DNA of 64,000 nucleotides from contig NIVC01000695.1 in assembly GCA_002269645.1 (NCBI GenBank), positions 62,001-126,000 of the forward strand. Direction: 5' to 3'. The first letter of the stretch is position 1. Every line of letters begins with the position of its first letter. Made by a program: the position numbers and the translations under genes. Below the pieces are notes generated by a model. That model did no database searches. It saw nothing but the letters and a program-made list of their open reading frames with translations, and had not been told where the DNA came from. The DNA comes from Macrostomum lignano. Lineage: Eukaryota. Positions 24,559 to 37,400 of this stretch are shown one piece after another.

Positions 24559-25988
24559 CAATTCTTACCATATTTGTGATTTTATTCTTTTAAGCATTTC
24601 CTTTAAATTGTCCCTAGGGACTTCAGGGAGCATAGGCCTAGGAAAAAAGCAAAAAATTCCCCATCTCCCTAGGCCTAGGGTTTTCATTTTAAAAGTTTAG
24701 GGAATTGGCATCTTTAGTCAATATTATATAGCATGCATTAATACCATATAAGTTGATATTTTAATGAAAGAAAACATCTTAAAGATTATTTTGCAACATG
24801 GAATGAGCAGTAAATTTATGTTCACAAGTTTCAGTTTGTGGTTTTAGAAAAACTTAGAAATCCTTAGGCTTAGCTTAGAAATATTAAATCTTTTTGAATA
24901 GGCCTAAAAAAAAGTAGGCCTAAAATATAGAATACTTTTTGTTTTGTAAATAAAAAATAGCCTTTGCTAAGCTAAGGTCTTTAAGTCTTAAAATATCTCA
25001 TATAGTATAGTTTTTATATTCATAGGCCTAGTCATAGGCCTACTCATACTATATAATACAGTAGAAAACGAATTTTAGGCAAACCGCAAAAGTTTGTCTT
25101 GAATATTGCAATTAATATTCTTTATCAATAAATAAAGAACTTACTTACCTTAGGACCTAACCATTGATAGCAAGCTAGGTAGGCCCTAGTAGGTAGCTTT
25201 GCATTTGATCAAGTTATGGTCATCCCTTGAAATTGTGACAAATATTAAATAAGGAGGGAGACGTTTTGATGTTGGAAGTATGTAATCCAGTTCAGCAGCC
25301 GAAATCACATTAGTTAGCACATAAATAGAGAAACAGCACTTAACTTGGGCTTGGCTCTGCTATGGTGGTGTGCCTTGCAAAGGCCGGTTGGGGCCCACGC
25401 CGTTGGGGGTACAGGACAGTTCGGTAATAATGTGGCAGGCGCGGGATGTCCAGCCACTGAGTTGAGTAGTTTTTTAATCGATGACTAAATTTTTATTTTT
25501 GGCCTGTCCGTGCGTTGATCACTAAATTATTTTCCCTGGCTTGGAGTTGTCCAGCCGATGCTCCATCGAGTGTTCCACGCTCTGTACGCTCGCGTCCCCG
25601 CGCGAGAACTTTTGTTGGAATACACTCGCCACCGGGTTATATGCGTAATGTTTCAAGCCGTGTTCAGTGTCGCCTATTGAGTTTCCCTTCAGCTGCTCCC
25701 ACTTGCGGATGAGTTTGCCTGACTATTTAACCCCCTGATTTTTTGTGTGGAAATGCTATGCGCTCGTTCCGTTTGCTTTGCTCTCCCGCTCTTTTAACTT
25801 CCGTTTGTCATTAATTTTATCCAGTTGAAACTATAGTTTTATTTATTTAATTTAGCACCTAGATGCCGACTGCGTTTCACTCGTTCGTATTCAATTTAAG
25901 TTACCGACCTGCTCCATTGTAATCATTTATTAAGCCTAATAAACACCGACTATCTCTTAGTAGTATTTCTTTAGTAGCCATAGTATTT

Positions 25989-26335
25989 CTTGAGTCATTT
26001 GCCCGTGGGGCGTAAAATAACCAAAGTTCTCATCTCAAAGAAAGCTCTGAGACTTATCCGTTACGTAATACGTAAATTACGGTGGTGGCAGAAACTACCC
26101 TATTGAAAGTAACAAGCTCTGCAAATCGACACATTAATTTTACGGCCTCAGAACCTCCGATGTTTCATCGCTTGAACGACCGCGCCGCTAACGACCGCTC
26201 CGCTACGATTACGACTACCCTCCCCCGGACTTGAGAACCCGGCAGTCGGAGTAAAACAGGAGAAGAACTTCGTTGTGATTCGTCTGCGCGATTTTCCGGA
26301 TTTATTCGTGTGAACTCAACGCCGGCGGCAATTCA
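25989..26335 (+). repeat. Left copy of a diverged ~300-350-bp inverted repeat (partner 32610-32905)
   Basis: CTTGAGTCATTTGCCCGTGGGGCGTAAAATAACCAA, TACGGTGGTGGCAG, CTACGATTACGACTACCCTCCCCC and GCCGGCGGCAATTCA all recur as reverse complements at 32610-32905. Confidence 0.85.
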
Positions 26336-26802
26336 GACGAGGAATCCGCCCCACCTCAGCTGGTGTCAGAAAATTTTCAAACCAGCCTATTCCGAAAAAA
26401 ATCTTCTCCACCCCCACCTCAGTAACATTATGGACAATTCGGTAACAATATTTAATTTCGAGACTAACACTACTTATATCGCACCAACTTCTACATCATG
26501 GCCAAATTGGCCTATAATTTCATCACTTTACAGATATTGTTTGACAATATTATCTTTGTTAAAATGTATTTTGGTCTACGGACCGACATGCAACTTGGTA
26601 GCTAGTATTAAAATTTTTCAGGAACGTAAAATGAAGTTTCTTTCATCTGAGGTGGAAAGAGCAAACCCTAGGCATTAGGAAGGACTAAAAGTCCAAGCAT
26701 CTTTTATAGTTCGTGTTGCAAAATCGAAAGTTCAAACACTAAATCTAAAAGTTTAAAGAGAAGGGAGAGGATTGAGAGGCCGCGGAGAGGGAGGGAGAGA
26801 AG

Positions 26803-27167: not shown

Positions 27168-27231
27168 TCAGCAACAATACCGAAAACTTCAAAGAGTGGA
27201 GTTCGATTGGTCATGTGAAATATGTCATGCC

Positions 27232-27336
27232 CAGCAGCAAAAACAGCAGCAGCAGCAGCACCAACAGCACCAGCAGCAACAGCAGCAACAGCAGCACCAG
27301 CAGCGAGAGCAGCAACGACAACAACAACAGCAGCAC
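27232..27336 (+). repeat. CAG/CAA trinucleotide tract (poly-Gln if coding)
   Basis: About 35 codons of CAG/CAA/CAC directly visible. Confidence 0.9.
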
Positions 27337-27374
27337 GCACCAGACTTTACGTTCGGTCTAAGACTTTGTCGTAG

Positions 27375-27443
27375 CTCCTACTTGGCGCCGCGTTTTCGTC
27401 GCGGAGGGGAAACACGCCCAATGAGGGTGTACGAAGAGCGCCA
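27375..27443 (+). ncRNA. Candidate HDV-like (double-pseudoknot) self-cleaving ribozyme at the 5' end of the Ingi-type LINE
   Basis: Manual fold: P1 CTCC/GGAG(GGG), P2 TGGCGC/GCGCCA, P3 GCG/CGC with L3 TTTTCGT, P1.1 TT/AA, P4 ACAC..GTGT, J4/2 ACGAA. Confidence 0.65.
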
Positions 27444-29700
27444 TAACCCGGACACTGCGTCCAGCAAGAGTGATTGTACTGGAAGAGGAGCGCGCATAGG
27501 TTTTAACACCGGGGGAGCCAAGTATCCGGCCCGCTACCTCCCCGCTCTTCTGTTGCTCAGGGCCGGCGATGTTGAGACCAACCCGGGGCCTGCTAACAGC
27601 TGCGAGAACGTTAGCTGCGGCCGCCCTCTGCACGGCAAGTTCCTCACCTGCGCGAGATGTAACAGCCGCTTCCATCTGCAGAGGGACTGCTCCGGGTTGA
27701 GTCGCTGGGCCGCGAACAAGGCCGCGGACGCCCAGGAATGGCACTGCGCCAATTGCGAGAACGGCCCCACCACCCAGACAGACTCGTCGTCCTCTGACCA
27801 ACCGTCCATCCCTATCTGCCAGCCCACGGAGGAGCACACCGCTCGCAGGCAAGCTTTGCTCAACCGTATCCGGCAGGAGAAACCTACGTCCCTGCCTCCC
27901 TGCCTGTATGGTGCGCTGGTTCACCAGCTTTCTCGAAGGCAGGCAGATCGCTGTGCGGTCGGCTCCTCGCTTGGGAAATGGCGCAGACTGAAGGAAGGCG
28001 TCCGCCAAGGCGCCGTCAGCTCGCCTGCTCTCTTCCTAATCTATGTTAACAAGTGGTCCGGTCACACCGTGCCTCTCGTCAGCTACAGTGGCTATGCAGA
28101 CGATCTTGCTCTCTGGAGCACGGGCCGGAACCTCCCAGAAATCCAGGCTCGCCTCCAATCCGCCCTGCAGCTCGTCGAGGAATGGGCCGCTCATCTGCGC
28201 ATCGACATCAACTCTCTAAAACTGAGGGATGCCTCTTCTCTCGTGACAGATCCGACCGTCAACGCAACCTCAGCCCTCACCATCCGGGGCCAACAGATTC
28301 CCTTCAAGCAGAAGATTAAGTTTCTCGGAATCTGGATTGACCAAGGTCTGCTATTCGAAAAGCAAACTGACTCCTTCGCAGAGCTGGCATCCTTCGTGCC
28401 CTAGCCCACCGTGAATGGGGCTGGGATCGCAAGCTACTGCTGCGAGTCTACCGGGCTCTTGTCGAATCCTTCGTGTGGCACGCCGCCGCGGCCTGGACGC
28501 CCTGGCTATCTGCGACCCGTCTCAACGCCATCGACCGTGCCCAGAGTGAGGCCCTCTGGGTTGTCACTGGTCTCCCCCGCTCGACACCGGTAGAGGCCAT
28601 CTACTTTGAGTCGGGAATCCTTCCTATCAGCCTCGAAGCCCGCCGAAGATCGCCGCTTGCGTTTGAGAAGGCGCTCCGCAAACCTCCTGGCGACCCCTTC
28701 CGGCAACGTTGCGAGCGCCGCCAGGACACCCGGCTTTCTGCAAACCGAAGCCTCCGCGAACAAGCTAGACGCATCACCGATGAGCTCCTTGGTGGACACC
28801 GGCTCCTACCCTGGAATTCGTTGGCCGACGCCGGAGTGCGCATGTTCACCAAGCTGCTGTTCGAGCCCATTGAAACCGACGCCGCCCAGGCGGTCCAAGC
28901 CACCGAGACCGCGCGCTGCCCGAACGCCGCTACTTACTTCACCGACGGATCCGTCTCGGGTGGCGTTGAAAACGGGGGTTGCGGCCTGGATTCTCCTAAG
29001 CCAGGACGGCTCCATCAGCCGGCGCGGGTGCGTGGCCACGGGCCGCTGGTGCAGCTCCTTTGAGGCCGAACTTATCGCCATCTTCCAGGCTCTAAGCGAC
29101 ATCATTGCCAGCGCCCCGAAAGAGGCTGCCATTCTCACCGACAGCCAGAGCGCTATCGCGGTCCTGCAAGCTGATCGGCCAACCATCAACCCGCTCGTCG
29201 AGAGCGTTAAGGAACGCCATATCACCGCCGCCCGTCTTTCCAAGATCATCCTGCAGTGGGTGCCCGGGCACGCCGGAATCCCCTGAAATGAACTGGTGGA
29301 TGCCGAGGCCAAACTAGCGGCCACGCTGCCTCAGGAGCATGTCGGCACCACCCTGGATTCGGCTAGGGCCCGCATCCGACGGGTTGTTAACTATTCGCCC
29401 AACATGACAGGCCACCTGCTCGAGGTATATGGCCAAAAGATTACAACGCATGAGGGCCCTCGCAGGCAACAGTTCCTAGTCTCGCAGGTCCGCGCCGGGC
29501 ACTGTCCTGCATCGATCTACTACCGCAATCGCACCGGCATTGAGGTCGGGGGCAACTGCCGTCTCTGCGTAGAAGAGGTCGACCAATTCCCCCTCCTCAA
29601 CTGCCCGGCGCGGCCCTGCAGCAGCAACAGATTGCCTTAGACCAACAACAGGATGATGAGCCGATGGAGAGCTCCATGGATGAAGATGCTCCAATCCCAC
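27375..29700 (+). mobile_element. Ingi-clade (I-group) non-LTR retrotransposon, internally deleted: 2A peptide, PHD, partial RT, RNase H, CCHC-like tail
   Basis: LLLRAGDVETNPGP (27553-27591), PHD at 27601-27756, GVRQGAVSSPALFLIYVN and YADDLALW (RT), YFTDGSV..SSFEAELIAI..ILTDSQSA..QWVPGHAGIP (RNase H), CRLC..LLNC. Frameshifts and stops after 28404. Confidence 0.88.
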
Positions 29701-30933
29701 AATTTTTCCTCAGCAGGTCCAGTCTACAGTGTTTACTGTAGATTGTAGACTGTAGTCATTCCCAGAGCTTCTGAGAAGGAGAAATACATCCTGATACGCT
29801 CCGATGGCTTTAGTTACAGCCGACAGTGCAGCCGTGAAGCCAGAACATATTGGAGGTGCTCAGTCAGAAATGCGCACACTAAATGTACTGCCTCAGCTCT
29901 TTAGTCAAATGGCGTATACATTAGTGGCAAGAACGAGCATACTTGTCACCCAGCATGGTCGGGCAACCGGCGCGATAAGCTGACTGGTTGCTCGAGAAGT
30001 ATGCGATCAAGCTCAGGAGGAGCTCTTCAGACCTGCTGCTGAAATCGCAGAACAAGTTCTTCTGCAAAACGAAGGCAGCTTAAGAGGTCTGCCTCAGCTG
30101 CCGACAGTGAAACTGTTGGCAAAAGCAGCAAATCGAGCCCAAGCTGCACAGCGTCCCGATGAGCCACGAGATCTGAGATTTCAACTTCAAGAAGACGCAC
30201 TTCCAGATGGCTTCCTGCAAATTGAGGTCCGCATTGAAGAGAGTGGCAGACGCCACTTTATATTTGCTAGCCAGCGTCAATTACAGCTGCTGGGACGTTG
30301 CAAGGAGTGGTTCGGCGATTGAACCTTTTCGTCGTCAAGGAACCATTTCTACAGCTGTATATCTTTCATGGTTACGTTCGGCAGAATGAGTCTGTAAAGC
30401 AGATACCACTAGCCCACATTCTCATGTCTGGAAAGAGCAAACGAGACTACAGGCGTACGTTGCGAGCTGTCAAAGATCTGCTGCCTGAATGCAAACCGAA
30501 GAGCATCGTATTCGACTTTGAAGCCGTATTGTGGAGGGCTGCGAAGTCTATTTCCTAATGTGAAGCGTCATGGCTGCAGCTTTCACTATTCGCAGGCAAT
30601 TTGGAGGCATATTCAATCAGTTGGCTTACAACCTGACTACACTGACGACGAGGCTGTTTGGTAATTTTGTCGCAAATTAATGGCACTGCCTTTTCTGCCA
30701 GGCCATTGCGTGCAAGCTGCATTCATGGAGCTGAAGCAGACAATCCAAAACGAACACCTGCGTGCGTTGTGTGAGTACGTTTCCAACACATGGCTCAGCA
30801 GCACTGTCTGGCAATTGGACGAAATTAGTGTTTTCCGCCATACCATCAGAACGAAGAATGAGACTGAAGGCTACCACAAACGTCTCAACTAAAGGGCACG
30901 GGGTGGCAACCTTGGCTTTTACAAACTTGCAAC

Positions 30934-31967: not shown

Positions 31968-32609
31968 CTTGCAACCCTACTTTACGACGAAGCAATGGTT
32001 AGCCAATCTCCAGGCCAAGCTGGTGTCTCAGGAGCGACTCATCCGCTATCAGAGGCTTGTCCATCGAACGAAAGAGGCCAAGCTGCATCGTTACTGGGCC
32101 GTGTACCAGCCGGGCATCAAAACTGCAGCTAGTGCTACTACGTGCTACTACGTGCTACTCGTGCTACTACGTGCTACTAAACCAGACAACCCCGGCGCAA
32201 TGCACAAATCAATCGATAATATATCGTGCTAGTAGTGATAATGAGGTGGGGTGGAGAAAGAAAATCTTGCTTGCACGGTCGTTAGGCGGCTGATGTAATA
32301 TATCTGAATCTGAATATGAGTATATGTAATTTAAAAGTAAACGATTTCGTAGCTATTTACTTTATGTCTGCTGTATTTGTATTATAGTATTTGTATTGTA
32401 TTTATATCTTTTACTGTACTTTCCACAGTATGTATTTATGTTATTTTGCACAATAGTTTTATAATGTAGCTTTTTTTAATGACCAAATTAATATATAATA
32501 AATTATCAATGTTCACTCGTAAAAGTTGGAGCTCTGATTTGGCACTCTCGACTGAAAATTAAAATGACGCTTCTCGGCAATTCATTCATTTCATTACACT
32601 GAGTGAGTT

Positions 32610-32905
32610 TGAATTGCCGCCGGCGTCGAGTTCGCACGAACTAAGCCGGAGAATCGCGCAGTCGAATCTTAACGATTTTTCTCCTGAATACTCCGTCCTC
32701 ATTTCCGGGGGGGAGGGTAGTCGTAATCGTAGTCGAACAGGCACGGTCGTTCGTAAACTCAAGGTACGTCGGAATTCGTTGATGCTTACTAATAGTAGCG
32801 TAGTGCTGCCACCACCGTAATTTATTACGGAACGTTGGGATCTCAGGGCTTGCTTAGAGTTGAGAACAATTGGTTATTTTACGCCCCACGGGCAAATTAC
32901 TCAAG
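32610..32905 (-). repeat. Right copy of the diverged inverted repeat (partner 25989-26335)
   Basis: Reverse-complement matches as listed for the left copy. Confidence 0.85.
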
Positions 32906-34443
32906 ATAGACTAGATTTATTGATCCAACGCAGATAAATACACTTACCATTAGTTTATTTGACTCTTATATTAAATTCAGTCAGGGCGCCACGTAAAAGA
33001 CAGAGCTTGTCATTTATGTGACTGGCCCTTAAAAAAATGTTCGCTAGCCTTTTTGAAATTCCTTCATTGAAGGGAGCGAGGTGGCCGAATTAAATTGGTG
33101 CTACGTCCTCAGTTTTCAAATGCAAGGACATGTAAGCCTAGATCGAGATGGCATAATTCTTTAACCAATTGCCGACTGCAAACGTCCGGCCTGGCAAACG
33201 TCCGGCTGGAAAACGTCGTAGACCCGTCTGCAGGATTTTGTACATCTGAATTCTGTGTAGGCGAGCGTAGCCATGCCCTAATAGATTCTTTTTTTATCTG
33301 CCCCTCAAGGTAAAAAAGTTTGCCAACCTAGTTTTTCTATAGGGGCATCTGTTGACTTACCAGCAGGACATATAAAGAACCAAAATCAGTTAAAATGTCT
33401 GCTCATGTGAACTACGAGTACTTCGTAGTCCACTGGCAGTCTGTAAGACTGCCTTACGAGTCTCTAGCTGTGGGTCAGCGATCGTGAACGACCATAGCGC
33501 CTCGCCCACCATGTATGCGTTCGATTATAGCTGCAAAGTACAGCAAATACTCAAAGTTGGCTGAGTTAGCTGTGGTGATTGGAGCTCGGCACGTCTCGTT
33601 TTATCGAATATAAGATGTTGGCGACATTAACAATTCTTCCCTGAATTTAGGGAATACTCGAAAAATTCAGCAGTTCCCGAATGACCATTGACTCTGAGCG
33701 CAGTTAGAGACTTCTCGTTAAAGACCTCCAAGACGAGTCATACAATGTGCTGTCTAGATTTCTCCTCAATCTCAATCAAGTCATCCCATTTTGTACAGAC
33801 TGATCAAAGGTCCATCTGTTGTTGTTTAATTAGAATTATTATTTTATTAGTGTTTATTTGTGATCCTTAAAGGGCCGTTTAGATGGTAAAAAATATTATT
33901 CAAATATCTCTTCGCATTTTTTCAACACGAACGGTAATGGACAAAATAAGCAACAGTTTTTTAGTGCTTTTAAAACAGAGATTGCATCCGTTGCGCTCCC
34001 GTATGATTATTGATGATCCTGAAAAGGGCTGAGAAGTTCAGCTCCTCTGAAGTTAGGAGTGGTGATGCAATGGCGGATTTAAGGGGCCGCTAGGTGTGGA
34101 TTGCAGAGGTGGATTTGCAATCGCGGATTTTTATCATTCAGAATTAAAACAAATTGAACAAGTTGAACAATAACTTTCTATCTTGCGGCTGTCAGTGTTA
34201 GAGTAGGAATCCAAATGTATTATTGAATAAAGTAGAAAATTTTATTGAATAACAAAGCAATATATTCCTTAGGCATTATTAAATTAGGGAAGTATCCTGT
34301 TTCTTATGACGTTATCATTCACTAGTATCAAGTGAAAAAAGCTGCATAAATGTGTCTGGACAATTGCAATCAAGTTGCGTTGCGTCACTGGCGCAAAGTT
34401 GAAGGGCATATTACAGGATGTGGTTACAGACACTCCAGCTGCT

Positions 34444-37400
34444 TCAGTTGATGAGGCCCAGCAAAATCAACGGTGCCAATGCCGCAATGCAGCCAGCGTG
34501 CAAAGCTGACTTTTGGTGCTGTGAGCTGGCCACTTTGAAGTAATTCTCCTCATCGTCTTTGTCTTCTTCTGAAATGTGAATAGCATTTGCTTATGCTTTT
34601 AGCAACTATGAACTACGAGTATAAAATATACACTACTGACCGGTCAACAATCATCCCAACTCACCCTTCGTGTCCTGGCACGCAGAGCACTCAGCGATCC
34701 GCTGCTCACACTGAGGCCCAGTGAAGCCTGGCTGACATTGGCACTTCTGTCTGTGATAGTAGGCTGAAATGATGGTGGCGATGGGCTGCTGTCAGTCAGT
34801 CAGTCAGTCAGTCAGTCAGTCAGTCAGTCAGTCAGTCAGTCAGTCAGTCAGTCAGTCAGTCAGTCAGTCAGTCAGTCAGTCAGTCAGTCAGTCAGTCAGT
34901 CAGTCAGTCAGTCAGTCAGTCAGTCAGTCAGTCAGTCAGTCAGTCAGTCAGTCAGTCAGTCAGTCAGTCAGTCAGTCAGTCAGTCAGTCAGTCAGTCAGT
35001 CAGTCAGTCAGTCAGTCAGTCAGTCAGTCAGTCAGTCAGTCAGTCAGTCAGTCAGTCAGTCAGTCAGTCAGTCAGTCAGTCAGCTACTCACCCGTGTCGT
35101 CAGCCATGTCGCAGTCAGGGCAGCAGCTGCCCCTGCTGGCGCAGTCGCACACCACAATCTTGGGAGTCCACACCGTGACGGCTCCGACCTCGTCCACCGC
35201 CGCCAGCTGCAGTTTGATGTCGCCTCGCCAGTTGTCGACGGGCTGCCACACGAGCTGCCAGCTGTTGCTGGCCCCAGCCTCCAGCTTCGCGGTCCCCCCG
35301 ACGGCCTCCAGCACGGTGACATTCGGTGAGGCGCCGTCGGGATCCGTCACGGAGAAGGTGACACCGACACTGTTGTTCCCGTTCACTCGCAGCTGGCTCG
35401 GGACGCTCTCAAACTCAGCAGGTCGGTTAGCCAGGACAACCCGGGTTCGAGTCTCGTCTCGAATAGCGACGGCCGCGTCTTGAGCGGCTACGACCGAGCG
35501 AAGCTGAGCGGCGTCGAACATGCAGGTGAGGTAGGAGGAGCCGGAGCTGCGGCACACCTGCCAGGGAGAAGGCAGCGAGAGGATTAAACTCAGTGACTTG
35601 ATGCAGCAGAGAGGCAGATTCAAACTATGCGTACACCGCGTGGCAAACAATGGATAAATAATCAGCGGTCCTAGTGCGTGACAACGATTGTCTGGCGAGC
35701 GCCGGTAGGCGCGAGCCATAGACAAATCGTTGTCACGTGCTGCGACCGCTGATTCTTTGCATTGTTTTTCTGTTTGACGATCCTACAGACAATGCATTGC
35801 TTGTAGTAATGGATTGTTCTGCATTAAAAATGTGAATAGCGATCGTCAAATTGCTAAACAATGCAAAGACGACGCTATAGCTCGTACCAAACACAATCAA
35901 GCCAAGAGAAAACAGCCGGTCATCCGGTCAAAGAGGCGATTGGATTTGCACTTACGCTCGTAGTGTGCAAACTCGGCCTCCTGTAGGCATTCTAAGAGCC
36001 TCAGATTCAGAAAAAGACGTCGTGTTTTTTTACTCCAGTACTTCCTTCTTGTGTTTGTTCAGCCCGATATATGGACTGAGTTGGCTACTCACCTCTTCCG
36101 AAGCGTTCTTGAGCTTCGCGTTCCCGCCGAACAGCGCTAGCATGTTGTCCTTGAAGTCCTCGGCAAAGGTCGGCACGAAGCTGAGATTGCAGAAGTCAGC
36201 TCGGCCCTTGCCAGCCGGGTAGTGCAGGTAGCTCGGCTCTGAGCTGTTGAGTCTCCAGCTGTTCCCGAACTCAAACAGCTGCCTCTCGGAGCTGCCAGCT
36301 GGCAGGACGCTGCCGTTTCTCAGTTTGAATCCGCTCGCGTCGCTGTTGCCCAGCAACCCGTCCAGTCCGCTCGGGTATTTTCCTGACAAGTCCAGTTGAA
36401 CGCCGACTCTGAGCGAGCTCGTCTCCATGGTAACGGTGACGCTGACGCCGGTAGACTCGTCGACAATGTCGATGGTGCTGTTGTCGGGGACCTCCAGTCG
36501 GTAGCTGTCCAGTCTGGTCGCGTTGCTCAGCGCCGCCAGCTCGCCCCTGACGCTGCCGATCCGACGTCCGTCGCTGCTGAAGACGTCGAGGTCGTCGGAG
36601 CTTTCGTTGCGGATCACCGACACGGCCAGCTCGTTGAGGCCGGACTTCAGCGCGACGCCGACGAAGGCCGTGGCGGCTCCACCGCTGACTGGCGCGGTGC
36701 GCGCTTGCAGCCGCAGCGTCGGTGAGTTCGGCCACCGTTCGCTGGTGAGCAGGTGGTACTCGCAGTGACCGTTGAATGTGTAGCTGCGGTTCGAGAGCGT
36801 GCTCAGGTGGGGGTCGCCTCGGTTGAAGCCTGGAGATCGGAGGTTTAGAGACCAATTGCTTACCAATGGGTATTCAGTGAGCGGAAAAGTCACCGTATCT
36901 GAATTTTTGAGGTGCTCTACCTTTGAGTAAGATTGGTTTTATATAAAGGAGTCGGATCTCTAATCAAGCGTTCTGTTAGTTCAAATTATCGATTTGAGAG
37001 TTTGGTTAGGGATATCGATTGATATAAAGGTTCCTATCAAGCCTGGATAGAGAAAGCAAGAATCGGAATTTGAGAAATTGTTTTCTTTTTCTACCGTACA
37101 CTAAAGTCCTTTCATTGGCTCAGGCGGAGCACAGCTGCATCCCAAACAAATTAATCACCTCCTTCAGGCGGCTTGTAGCTTCGGCTGGTGCACACGGGCC
37201 GCGCCCGGGAGAATGCGGTCATCATGCCGGCCGCTGAGCAGATTTTCGGGCCATAGGATTCGCTCAGGTACTGCGGCGACTGCTCGAAGCGCCACCACCA
37301 TCGCGTTTCGTTGGCACTGTCGCGGAAGAAGTACATGGCGTGCCCGGCGCCGCCAGAGCTGGAGCTGATGAGGTGACCACCTGAGTAGGGAGCGTTTTTT

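What the first reader, a model, noticed from the sequence alone, without database searches (positions are those of the whole stretch)
27375..27443. HDV-like ribozyme candidate with a compensatory UU/AA P1.1 at the 5' end of an Ingi LINE
Seen: CTCC-TACT-TGGCGCC-GCG-TTTTCGT-CGC-GGAGGGG-AA-ACAC(GCCCAATGAGG)GTGT-ACGAA-GAGCGCCA maps element by element onto the HDV fold. P3/L3 GCG-UUUUCGU-CGC resembles the CPEB3 ribozyme GCG-UUCACGU-CGC. The catalytic C sits in ACGAA (27432), and P2 is UGGCGC/GCGCCA. Where HDV has CC in L3 pairing with GG, this has UU and the partner position is AA, an apparent covariation. Only 4 of 7 P1 pairs are present, as if the first 3 nt (predicted CCC) were lost on insertion. 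Known: trypanosome L1Tc/ingi elements start with CCC and carry 5' HDV-like ribozymes. Inference: a metazoan Ingi ribozyme with an unusual A-U P1.1.
Basis: partly seen in the sequence, partly recalled or inferred. Interest (0 to 1): 0.8.

Follow-up and report, generated by a model that had tools for sequence, protein, structure and literature searches.

The report
Crippled HDV-like ribozyme in a LINE
The flagged 69 bases are very probably the remains of a small self-cutting RNA (an HDV-type ribozyme) that sits at the front of a jumping gene (a LINE retrotransposon). Related elements from other samples carry complete versions at the same spot, but this copy has lost part of one essential helix and is most likely dead.

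Summary
P2 is 6 bp, P3 is 3 bp with a 7-nt L3, P1.1 is UU/AA, P4 is present, and J4/2 is CGAA with C27432. P1 has only 4 contiguous pairs.

Alone the motif is only modestly significant, and no Rfam model detects it. The decisive evidence is comparative. Five distant relatives (27-43% protein identity where measured), all with the same N-terminal 2A peptide and PHD-type zinc finger (RT and RNase H are confirmed only in the full-length relative L005), carry complete HDV-like folds. These folds have 6-7 bp P1 helices and end 86-132 nt upstream of the 2A, as here. Every helix covaries: 17 of 19 pairs change on both sides, and 92% of cells pair against 60% when shuffled. CGAA is invariant.

The window copy is internally deleted (APE and the RT N-half are missing), frameshifted and lacks a complete P1. 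It is a fossil and probably does not cleave. "Ingi" and "CCC lost" remain untested.

HDV-like ribozymes at LINE 5' ends are known (R2, RTE, L1Tc). The new points are the link to this 2A/PHD LINE group (probably metazoan; source organisms unidentified), a CPEB3-like core and an A-U P1.1. I class it as a new member of a known kind, of moderate interest.

The parts
27372..27378 (+). Position of the P1 5' strand. Only CTCC (27375-78) pairs with GGAG of the 3' strand. TAG (27372-74) replaces the expected YYY, apart from a possible T27372.G27409 wobble. This is probably the 5' junction of a copy truncated by about 3 nt.
   Evidence: P1: 5 of 7 pairs, 4 contiguous. No YYYYTYY exists anywhere in the 480 nt upstream.
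27379..27382 (+). J1/2 linker TACT.
   Evidence: Under my assignments J1/2 is 0, 3, 5, 7 and 23 nt in the relatives (the stricter descriptor parses L001 with a 3-nt J1/2).
27383..27388 (+). P2 5' strand TGGCGC. C27389 is unpaired.
   Evidence: The centroid fold recovers P2.
27390..27402 (+). P3 (GCG/CGC) with L3 TTTTCGT. T27394-T27395 form the 5' half of P1.1.
   Evidence: The family consensus is GCC-TTCACGN-GGC. CPEB3 has GCG-TTCACGT-CGC.
27403..27409 (+). P1 3' strand GGAGGGG.
   Evidence: It lies directly after P3', as in all relatives.
27410..27411 (+). P1.1 3' half, AA, pairing with UU of L3.
   Evidence: Column pair 17-32 is CG in 5 sequences and UA in 1 (the window). Pair 16-33 is CG in 2, UA in 2 and UG in 2.
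27412..27430 (+). P4 hairpin. The register is either ACAC/GTGT, or more stably ACGCCC (27414-19) / GGGTGT (27425-30) with loop AATGA.
27421..27423 (+). First in-frame ATG of the LINE ORF. It lies inside the P4 loop.
   Evidence: frame of ORF 27196-28404.
27431..27437 (+). J4/2, A-CGAAGA. C27432 is the predicted catalytic cytosine.
   Evidence: CGAA is invariant in all 7 aligned sequences. L005 has the identical CGAAGA.
27438..27443 (+). P2 3' strand GCGCCA.
27547..27591 (+). 2A ribosome-skipping peptide, LLLLRAGDVETNPGP. It starts 125 nt after the ribozyme.
   Evidence: The motif GD(V/I)ExNPGP follows PMC3708506.
27601..27756 (+). PHD-type zinc finger, CENVSCG...HCANC.
   Evidence: The homologous fingers of the relatives hit Pfam PHD.
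27970..28338 (+). C-terminal half of the reverse transcriptase (YADD box). The APE domain and the N-terminal half of RT are deleted between about 27760 and 27970.
   Evidence: Pfam RVT_1 covers profile positions 110-205 only. tblastn starts at residue 408 of the L005 RT ORF.
29047..29283 (+). RNase H domain, in a different reading frame (frameshifted copy).
   Evidence: Pfam RNase_H, E = 3.4e-6.

Best explanation
Window 27383-27443 is the catalytic core of an HDV-like (nested double-pseudoknot) self-cleaving ribozyme. It contains P2, P3/L3, the 3' strand of P1, P1.1, P4 and J4/2 with catalytic C27432. It belongs to the 5' leader of a single-ORF LINE that encodes an N-terminal 2A peptide, a PHD-type zinc finger, reverse transcriptase and RNase H.

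In intact elements of this group, the ribozyme is inferred to cut a read-through or host co-transcript immediately 5' of a 6-7 bp P1. This would define the 5' end of the retrotransposon RNA. About 90-130 nt further on, the 2A peptide would release the LINE protein from whatever peptide was translated from the leader. Together these would insulate the element at both the RNA and the protein level.

The window copy is a fossil. Only 4 contiguous P1 pairs remain, consistent with a copy truncated by about 3 nt at its 5' end during insertion. The APE domain and half of RT are deleted, and the rest is frameshifted. The ribozyme here is probably catalytically dead.

Shown: the sequence mapping, the positional homology, covariation across relatives, and the damaged state of the copy. 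Inferred: self-cleavage itself, its role in 5' processing, and the cause of the incomplete P1.
For: 1. Element-by-element mapping, with the only strict-descriptor core in the 64 kb.

2. Relatives were found through the 2A/zinc-finger profile. They carry complete HDV-like folds that end 86-132 nt upstream of their 2A, compared with 125 nt in the window:
- L001: P1 ACAGCAC/GTGCTGT, P2 up to 8 bp, GCC-TTCACGA-GGC, CGAA.
- L005: a full-length LINE with RT and RNase H; P1 GTGGTGC/GCACCGT with a G1.U wobble, CGAAGA.
- L006: P1 GTATTCC/GGAATAC, P1.1 CC/GG.
- L008: P1 GCAGCAC/GTGCTGT, P2 7 bp.
- L009: L3 TTCACGT, an 11-bp P4.

3. On the 7-sequence core alignment, 91.7% of cells pair against 60% in shuffles and 28-44% when partners are slid. 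17 of 19 pairs change on both sides, and CGAA is invariant.

4. An unbiased descriptor hits 4 of 11 regions upstream of a 2A, against a 0-4.5% background per region.

5. Rfam in E-value mode gives sub-threshold, full-length hits to three different HDV-family models, exactly on my assignments: L005 to RF00094 at 29.4 bits, L008 to RF02682 at 26.9 bits, L009 to RF00622 at 15.9 bits. There are none in the control loci L002, L010 and L011.

6. Flanks upstream of P1 share no similarity among the 8 loci, so conservation begins at the ribozyme.

7. L007 is a second copy with an intact core but no P1 5' strand, as expected from 5' truncation.

8. The published precedent is L1Tc, which combines a 5' HDV-like ribozyme with an N-terminal 2A (PMC3185411 and PMC5814959).
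Against: - No Rfam HDV-family model detects the window sequence, even at E <= 10 on 401 nt.
- A leave-one-out covariance model built from five relatives (P2+P3+P4) finds the relatives but not the window candidate.
- P1 is incomplete, and no complementary strand exists within 480 nt upstream.
- The nested fold energy is no better than shuffles.
- The covariation alignment was registered by hand to the proposed structure, which inflates the pairing counts.
- The relatives are only 27-43% identical in protein where measured (L001 and L005). No copy of the window's own family was available, so the predicted full P1 is unverified.
- Other 2A LINE relatives (the L002 family, L003, L010, L011) show no clean HDV fold.
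- No cleavage data exist.
Confidence: 0.78

Rival explanations
1. The ribozyme in this very copy is still active. It would cleave with a short P1 (CTCC/GGAG plus a terminal U.G) 5' of T27372 or C27375.
For: All other elements of the fold are intact, including P2, P3, P1.1, P4 and the catalytic C. L1TcRz tolerates loss of P2 in one construct, which shows some structural slack in the class.
Against: Only 4 contiguous pairs remain of a helix that is 6-7 bp in every intact relative. The two mismatches lie next to the scissile site. The rest of the element is deleted and frameshifted, so nothing selects for activity. Rfam and the family covariance model do not score it.
Confidence: 0.1
2. Chance resemblance. 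A GC-rich 5' leader happens to contain short complementary segments and a CGAA that can be drawn as an HDV fold.
For: The generic descriptor (any C) finds as many cores in shuffled sequence as in the window, 5.3 against 8. The MFE z-score is 0.14. There is no Rfam or covariance-model hit. The 4-bp P1 match has roughly a 1-in-4 chance once J1/2 freedom is allowed.
Against: The strict CGAA core is expected 0.23 times per 128 kb. That is about 3e-4 for the roughly 150-nt interval where the relatives have theirs. L3 and J4/2 match the family (TT..CGT; CGAAGA is identical to L005). Five relatives have full folds at the same distance from the 2A.
Confidence: 0.07
3. The conserved structure is real but is not a self-cleaving ribozyme. 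It could be a translation-initiation or IRES-like element, or a constraint from coding the leader peptide.
For: The ORF stays open through the whole motif in the window and in L006-L009. The start ATG lies in the P4 loop here. L009 has no ATG between the ribozyme and the 2A. HDV-like ribozymes of R2 are reported to promote translation initiation (Ruminski et al. 2011, cited from memory and from reference lists).
Against: Leader peptides are not conserved among the relatives, whereas the base pairs are. The invariant CGAA, the 3-bp P3 with a 7-nt L3, and the P1.1 covariation are specific to the HDV catalytic core. Three HDV-family Rfam models give the best (sub-threshold) hits. A translation role would add to cleavage rather than replace it.
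Confidence: 0.05

Closest known systems
L1TcRz / Pr77 HDV-like ribozyme of the Trypanosoma cruzi L1Tc (ingi/L1Tc clade) LINE
   Same: An HDV-like ribozyme in the first ~77 nt of a single-ORF APE/RT/RNase H LINE whose protein starts with a 2A peptide. P1.1 is weak (a single pair in L1TcRz). It is proposed to free the element RNA from co-transcripts (PMC3185411, PMC4035085, PMC5814959).
   Different: L1TcRz is from a trypanosomatid and has no PHD finger. Pr77 is also an internal promoter, which was not tested here. No sequence relationship was shown. The window's clade membership is unverified.
HDV-like ribozymes at the 5' ends of R2, R4, RTE, Baggins and similar elements (Eickbush & Eickbush 2010; Ruminski et al. 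2011)
   Same: The same fold and the same proposed job: 5' processing of a LINE co-transcript, possibly helping translation. J1/2 length is variable, up to hundreds of nt in silkmoth R2 (PMC3774820).
   Different: They belong to different LINE clades, and none has a 2A peptide. R2 is rDNA-specific. The core sequences differ.
Mammalian CPEB3 ribozyme (Rfam RF00622)
   Same: P3/L3 is GCG-UUCACGU-CGC against GCG-UUUUCGU-CGC here, and relative L009 has the identical L3 UUCACGU. J4/2 is CGAA. P1.1 is weak.
   Different: CPEB3 is a single-copy intronic ribozyme and is not in a LINE. RF00622 does not hit the window and hits L009 only at 15.9 bits against a gathering score of 35.
Hepatitis delta virus genomic/antigenomic ribozymes (RF00094)
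   Same: Nested double-pseudoknot topology (P1, P1.1, P2, P3, P4) with a catalytic C followed by GAA. Relatives L005 and L008 have the G1.U wobble at the cleavage site.
   Different: HDV has L3 UCCUCGCU with two G-C pairs in P1.1, whereas here the pairs are U-A and U-A. The viral ribozyme works in a rolling-circle context. RF00094 scores L005 at only 29.4 bits against a gathering score of 50 and does not hit the window.

Membership tests
HDV-like self-cleaving ribozyme (nested double pseudoknot) | P1 helix of 6-7 bp whose first nucleotide is the cleavage site | tested here: not met
   Only CTCC/GGAG pairs (4 contiguous; 5 of 7 with the terminal U.G). There is no complementary 7-mer in the 480 nt upstream. 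The feature is met in relatives L001, L005, L006, L008 and L009.
HDV-like self-cleaving ribozyme (nested double pseudoknot) | P2 helix joining the segment 5' of P3 to the 3' end, crossing P1 | tested here: met
   TGGCGC/GCGCCA, 6 Watson-Crick pairs. The helix covaries across relatives; all 4 scored pairs change on both sides.
HDV-like self-cleaving ribozyme (nested double pseudoknot) | 3-bp P3 closed by an L3 of about 7 nt, followed directly by the P1 3' strand | tested here: met
   GCG-TTTTCGT-CGC-GGAGGGG. All 7 sequences have the same geometry.
HDV-like self-cleaving ribozyme (nested double pseudoknot) | P1.1: L3 nucleotides 2-3 pair with the two nucleotides after P1 | tested here: met
   UU with AA gives two A-U pairs. 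Relatives have C-G with U.G, C-G or U-A, and this helix is 85.7% paired. Whether A-U/A-U supports catalysis cannot be tested here.
HDV-like self-cleaving ribozyme (nested double pseudoknot) | P4 hairpin between P1.1 and J4/2 | tested here: met
   ACGCCC/GGGUGU (6 bp with one G.U) or ACAC/GUGU.
HDV-like self-cleaving ribozyme (nested double pseudoknot) | Catalytic cytosine at the start of J4/2 | tested here: met
   C27432 lies in CGAA. CGAA is invariant in all 7 aligned sequences. The role of the C follows PMC10879173.
HDV-like self-cleaving ribozyme (nested double pseudoknot) | Score at or above the gathering threshold of an Rfam HDV-family model (RF00094, RF00622, RF02682, RF01787/8) | tested here: not met
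   The window has no hit at gathering score or at E <= 10. The relatives score only sub-threshold, at 15.9-29.4 bits.
HDV-like self-cleaving ribozyme (nested double pseudoknot) | Mg2+-dependent self-scission giving a 5'-OH and a 2',3'-cyclic phosphate, abolished by C-to-U | not testable with these tools
   This is a biochemical assay.
Ribozyme family of the 2A/PHD LINE relatives (model R1 built here) | Significant score against a covariance model built from L001, L005, L006, L008 and L009 without the window | tested here: not met
   The window candidate is not found with default filters. With filters off, no hit appears in the correct register and the best score is 3.7 bits. The model is small, built from trimmed cores and dominated by sequence, so this is a weak negative.
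Ingi clade of APE-type LINEs | RT-domain phylogeny (RTclass1) places the element in Ingi | not testable with these tools
   No reference RT set was available. The supplement of PMC3708506 is not held.
Ingi clade of APE-type LINEs | Single ORF with APE, RT and RNase H, and an N-terminal 2A | tested here: inconclusive
   The 2A, the RT C-half and RNase H are present, but APE is deleted in this copy. Relative P0009 has PHD plus APE, and L005 has RT plus RNase H. RNase H argues against the CR1, Crack, L2 and Rex1 2A-LINE clades listed in PMC3708506. It does not separate Ingi from I, Nimb or other clades.

The most novel reading that the evidence does not exclude
A widespread, so far undescribed group of 2A/PHD/RNase H LINEs (probably metazoan; the source organisms are unidentified) uses HDV-like ribozymes whose core (P3/L3 GCC-UUCACGN-GGC, J4/2 CGAA, weak P1.1) is the closest natural counterpart of the mammalian CPEB3 ribozyme. 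This would suggest that CPEB3 was exapted from such an element. The ribozyme and the 2A would together form a two-level insulator, cutting the RNA and then skipping a peptide bond. That arrangement would let the element be expressed from host read-through transcripts even without its own AUG; L009 has none. The window lineage would show that P1.1 can be rebuilt entirely from A-U pairs.
Probability: 0.2. Interest if true: 0.7.

Novelty: new member of a known kind. Interest (0 to 1): 0.45.

Why it matters
HDV-like ribozymes are the known 5'-processing device of several LINE clades. In the literature I could search, the only pairing of such a ribozyme with an N-terminal 2A peptide is L1Tc of trypanosomes. 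The survey of 2A-bearing LINEs in multicellular organisms does not mention ribozymes (PMC3708506).

The window's fossil, together with five intact relatives, indicates that the ribozyme-plus-2A arrangement is conserved well outside trypanosomatids. It adds a set of natural sequence variants: an A-U P1.1, 4-8 bp P2 helices, J1/2 of 0-23 nt and a start codon inside P4. These are directly testable in cleavage and translation assays. It also gives a lead on the origin of the CPEB3 ribozyme.

For genome annotation, the motif marks the true 5' end of these elements. The locus in this window is itself a dead copy of no functional consequence.

Tried and rejected
- Rfam at gathering score over the whole window, and at E <= 10 on 27200-27600, gave nothing relevant.
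- Another copy in the window: none found.
- Same-family copies elsewhere could not be retrieved. The protein database holds only distant relatives of 44% identity or less. The window's own 402-aa ORF is not on record, so the source organism is not identified. P0007 is not on record either.
- The genome contigs and metagenome-contig scans gave only L002, L003 and L004. The viral-contig scan gave nothing.
- The leave-one-out covariance model R1 does not recover the window candidate.
- MAFFT on the natural sequences misaligned the window and L006 (A3). I therefore used hand-registered 47-nt and 51-nt cores (A2, A4), with the bias that this implies.
- A long J1/2 with P1 upstream of the CAG repeat, as in silkmoth R2: no YYYYTYY exists in the 480 nt upstream. 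The 6-of-7 matches I saw by eye in the window and in L003 are at chance frequency.
- Target-site duplication: none found. The only match is the CAGCAGCAACAG microsatellite.
- An upstream tandem LINE copy that would explain the CAR repeat: none.
- HDV fold in other relatives: I found none by eye, by descriptor or, for L002, L010 and L011, by Rfam. This covers the L002 family (many copies, 5' end near TCCAAAAGAGTACAGCC) and L011. L003 has P2, L3 and CGAA but a broken P3. L010 has P1, P2 and P3 but no CGAA or P1.1, so it is doubtful. L004 is an unrelated 2A in an AT-rich gene.
- The supplement of PMC3708506, wanted for reference RT sequences, is not held. Ruminski 2011 and Webb 2009 are not held.

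Full report
**1. The observation**

On the HDV topology it maps as follows:
- P1 5' remnant: CTCC (27375-78).
- J1/2: TACT.
- P2: TGGCGC (27383-88) with GCGCCA (27438-43).
- One unpaired C (27389).
- P3: GCG/CGC, closing L3 TTTTCGT (27393-99).
- P1 3' strand: GGAGGGG (27403-09).
- P1.1: AA (27410-11), able to pair with L3 positions 2-3 (UU).
- P4, then A-CGAAGA with C27432.

That loop contains the first in-frame ATG of the downstream ORF (27421). The quoted CPEB3 P3/L3 (GCG-UUCACGU-CGC) and its CGAA are correct (primer sequences in PMC5984629).

**2. Is it more than chance?**

Taken alone, only modestly.
- A strict descriptor finds one core in the window, this one. It requires P2 >= 6 WC, P3 of 3 WC, L3 6-8 nt, a two-pair P1.1, P4 >= 4 and CGAA. 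The expectation is 0.23 per dinucleotide shuffle, and 0 of 30 shuffles gave a core plus >= 4 contiguous P1 pairs.
- Without the CGAA requirement the window has 8 cores against 5.3 expected, so the generic motif is not informative.
- The nested MFE is ordinary (z = 0.14).
- No Rfam model hits, either at gathering score or at E <= 10 on 401 nt.
- P1 has only 4 contiguous pairs (5 of 7 with a terminal U.G). No fully complementary 7-mer exists in the 480 nt upstream.

**3. Context**

The motif lies at the front of a LINE on the + strand. The ORF (27196-28404 as listed; ATG at 27421) encodes the following:
- the 2A peptide LLLLRAGDVETNPGP (27547-27591);
- a PHD-type zinc finger (27601-27756);
- then, directly, the C-terminal half of a reverse transcriptase (Pfam RVT_1, profile positions 110-205).

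RNase H follows in another frame. Against the full-length relative L005, the window's RT match starts at residue 408 of the RT ORF. APE and the N-terminal half of RT have therefore been deleted, and the remainder is frameshifted. This is a dead, roughly 2.4-kb copy, and the only one in the window. Its 3' end and target-site duplication could not be defined.

**4. Relatives**

The protein databases hold no close relatives. A profile of the 2A/zinc-finger region retrieved distant ones from ENA assemblies, and I fetched their DNA. The window is 41% identical to L001 in the N-terminal region and 27-43% identical to L005; the other relatives rest on the profile hit.

Five loci have complete HDV-like folds just upstream of their 2A (segments as I assigned them, all verified against the fetched DNA):

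| Locus | Fold, 5' to 3' (the bar marks the predicted cleavage site) |
|---|---|
| L001 | \|ACAGCAC-TTCCCGCA-GCC-TTCACGA-GGC-GTGCTGT-GG-A-CGGG..CCCG-A-CGAA-TGCGGGAG |
| L005 (full-length LINE on a 481-kb contig) | AAT\|GTGGTGC-AACAT-GTCC-A-GCC-TTCACGC-GGC-GCACCGT-GT-CCATCTCC..GGAGGTGG-CGAAGA-GGAC |
| L006 | AAAT\|GTATTCC-(23 nt)-GGCGGA-ACT-TCCGTCC-GGT-GGAATAC-GG-G-ACGC..GCGT-G-CGAA-TACGCC |
| L008 | \|GCAGCAC-AAG-AACCGCA-ACC-TCAGCGA-GGT-GTGCTGT-GG-...-CGAA-TGCGGTT |
| L009 | (G)AGGTGC-ACACATC-CCAA-GCC-TTCACGT-GGC-GTGCCT(G)-G(A)-11-bp P4-G-CGAA-TTGG |

L007 has an intact core (GATCG-G-GCC-TTCACGA-GGC-ACGGCGC-GG...CGAAA-CGATC) but no P1 5' strand at all. It is a second 5'-incomplete copy.

In all seven loci the ribozyme ends 86-132 nt before the D of the 2A motif; in the window the distance is 125 nt (positions). 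Given 0.23 strict cores per 128 kb, a chance core inside that roughly 150-nt interval has a probability of about 3e-4.

**5. Structure tests**

- *Covariation.* I used a 47-column alignment of the paired and conserved segments (A2, ungapped) with the full pseudoknotted structure. 91.7% of cells form standard pairs, against 60.0 +/- 3.2% in shuffles (0 of 500 reach the observed value) and 28-44% when partners are slid by 1-3 columns. 17 of 19 pairs change on both sides. Every helix, P1.1 included, shows double changes. C13, T15, G23 and CGAA are invariant. Caveat: I chose the segments by complementarity, so the counts lean towards the structure. However, the positions of P2, P3, the P1 3' strand, P1.1 and J4/2 are fixed relative to each other and were not free choices.
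- *Unbiased descriptor.* A descriptor requiring P1 >= 6 contiguous, P2 >= 4, P3, L3 = 7 and CGAA was applied to the 300 nt upstream of each 2A. It hits 4 of 11 loci, where shuffles hit 0-4.5% of the time.
- *Rfam in E-value mode.* It gives full-length, sub-threshold hits to three different HDV-family models, exactly at my coordinates: L005 to RF00094 (29.4 bits), L008 to RF02682 (26.9 bits) and L009 to RF00622 CPEB3 (15.9 bits). There are none in L002, L010 or L011.
- *Upstream flanks.* The flanks of the eight loci share no significant similarity. Conservation therefore starts at the ribozyme, as expected if cleavage defines the 5' end of the transposed RNA.

**6. Negative results that limit the claim for this locus**

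- A leave-one-out covariance model (R1: five relatives; P2+P3+P4) recovers the relatives at 20-38 bits. It does not recover the window candidate, even with filters off. The model is small, built from trimmed cores and dominated by the relatives' primary sequence (GCC/GGC, TTCACG, GTGCTGT), so this is a weak negative. It is still a negative.
- No copy of the window's own family could be obtained. The prediction that intact copies start with CCCCTCC is therefore untested.
- Other 2A LINE relatives show no clean HDV fold. These are the abundant L002 family, L003 (P2, L3 and CGAA present but P3 broken), L010 (P1, P2 and P3 but no CGAA or P1.1) and L011.

**7. P1.1**

Under my register, the pairs formed in each locus are:

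| Locus | L3 positions 2-3 | Partner dinucleotide | Pairs |
|---|---|---|---|
| L001, L007 | UC | GG | U.G + C-G |
| L005 | UC | GU | C-G only, as in CPEB3 |
| L006 | CC | GG | C-G + C-G |
| L008 | CA | GG | C-G only |
| L009 | UC | GA | U-A + C-G |
| Window | UU | AA | U-A + U-A |

The C-to-U change in L3 of the window is matched by G-to-A in the partner (pair 17-32 is CG in 5 sequences and UA in 1). This is a genuine compensatory pattern, but it rests on one lineage, and its catalytic competence is unknown. Weak P1.1 helices are already known: a single pair in L1TcRz, and CPEB3 by my reading of its sequence.

**8. Mechanism**

By analogy with L1Tc and R2 (PMC3185411, PMC4035085, PMC3774820), I infer the following:
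- The element is transcribed as part of a longer RNA.
- The ribozyme cuts 5' of P1 and leaves the LINE RNA starting at P1.
- Translation enters the leader. The ATG lies in the P4 loop in the window, ATGs sit in J1/2 or at J4/2-P2 in relatives, and L009 has none.
- The 2A peptide then separates the leader peptide from the LINE protein.
- 5' truncation during target-primed reverse transcription would explain the window (about 3 nt lost) and L007 (P1 and J1/2 lost).

None of these steps was shown here.

**9. Comparison with the known and novelty**

This works like the 5' HDV-like ribozymes of R2, RTE, Baggins and especially L1Tc, which also has an N-terminal 2A. It is not detectably a member of any Rfam HDV-family model. 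The Ingi assignment is plausible but untested. In its favour, the element has RNase H, which the CR1, Crack, L2 and Rex1 2A-LINE clades of PMC3708506 lack, and Ingi-1_AC of Aplysia has an active 2A.

In the searchable literature I found no paper linking HDV-like ribozymes to 2A-bearing LINEs outside trypanosomatids. Ruminski 2011 and Webb 2009 could not be read.

Verdict: a new member of a known kind, represented in this window by a crippled fossil. The family-level finding and the CPEB3-like core are the interesting parts. Interest 0.45.

Noticed in passing
window 27230-27335; L007 ~60-85; L009 ~115-135; L003 1109-1131: A CAG/CAA microsatellite lies just upstream of the ribozyme in 4 of 8 loci, about 100 nt long in the window. 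It is absent from L001, L005, L006 and L008. It could reflect a target-site preference for CAR repeats, or it could be coincidence. It is not the tail of an upstream LINE copy in the window.
   Followed up: partly
window 25981-26338 and 32607-32913 (inverted); 29806-29901; 30298-30555: The LINE sits inside a ~6.9-kb unit bounded by ~360-bp inverted repeats of about 70% identity. The unit also holds a FLYWCH zinc-finger fragment (Pfam E = 1.4e-4, just below cut-off) and a MULE transposase fragment (E = 1.2e-3). It is probably a degenerate FLYWCH-MULE DNA transposon into which the LINE inserted.
   Followed up: partly
window 27196-27443; L007, L008, L009 gene calls: The reading frame that leads to the 2A stays open through the whole ribozyme and into the upstream flank in the window, L007, L008 and L009. 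L009 has no ATG anywhere between the start of the ribozyme and the 2A. L001 and L008 share CGAATGCGG, an AUG that spans J4/2 and P2. The window has its ATG in the P4 loop. This suggests non-canonical or read-through translation into the 2A.
   Followed up: no
L002 (JADGDE010000022.1, 'MAG: Thiotrichales bacterium isolate BB2'): A 4.3-kb contig filed in a bacterial MAG encodes a eukaryotic 2A/zinc-finger LINE. It belongs to an abundant family (P0012-P0028; some members lie on contigs of up to 1.2 Mb). This looks like host-genome contamination of the MAG.
   Followed up: no
L002 89-230 and proteins P0012-P0028: Copies of the L002 family diverge upstream of ...TCCAAAAGAGTACAGCC, which gives a sharp 5' boundary. 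They have a CCCCC-GCAAT-GGGGG hairpin with the ATG at its loop, like P4 of the window. I could not draw an HDV fold, and Rfam gave no ribozyme hit.
   Followed up: partly
window 40600-63000: This region is a dense run of unrelated minisatellites, with periods of 8, 10, 16, 20, 21, 23, 34, 35, 42, 46 and 112 nt. One family with an 8-nt period occurs at both 34.7 kb and 50.6 kb.
   Followed up: no
window 36606-36648 (-): Model R1 gives a weak hit here (11 bits, E = 1.6). It lacks CGAA and P2 pairing, so I take it as chance.
   Followed up: no
L010 ~1300-1420: Upstream of the 2A of P0009 (PHD + APE) there is a partial HDV-like arrangement: P1 CGCCATC/GATGGCG, P2 TCGGCG/TGCCGA, P3 TCC/GGG and L3 TTCAAGC. 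It has no CGAA and no P1.1. It may be a divergent or decayed ribozyme.
   Followed up: partly
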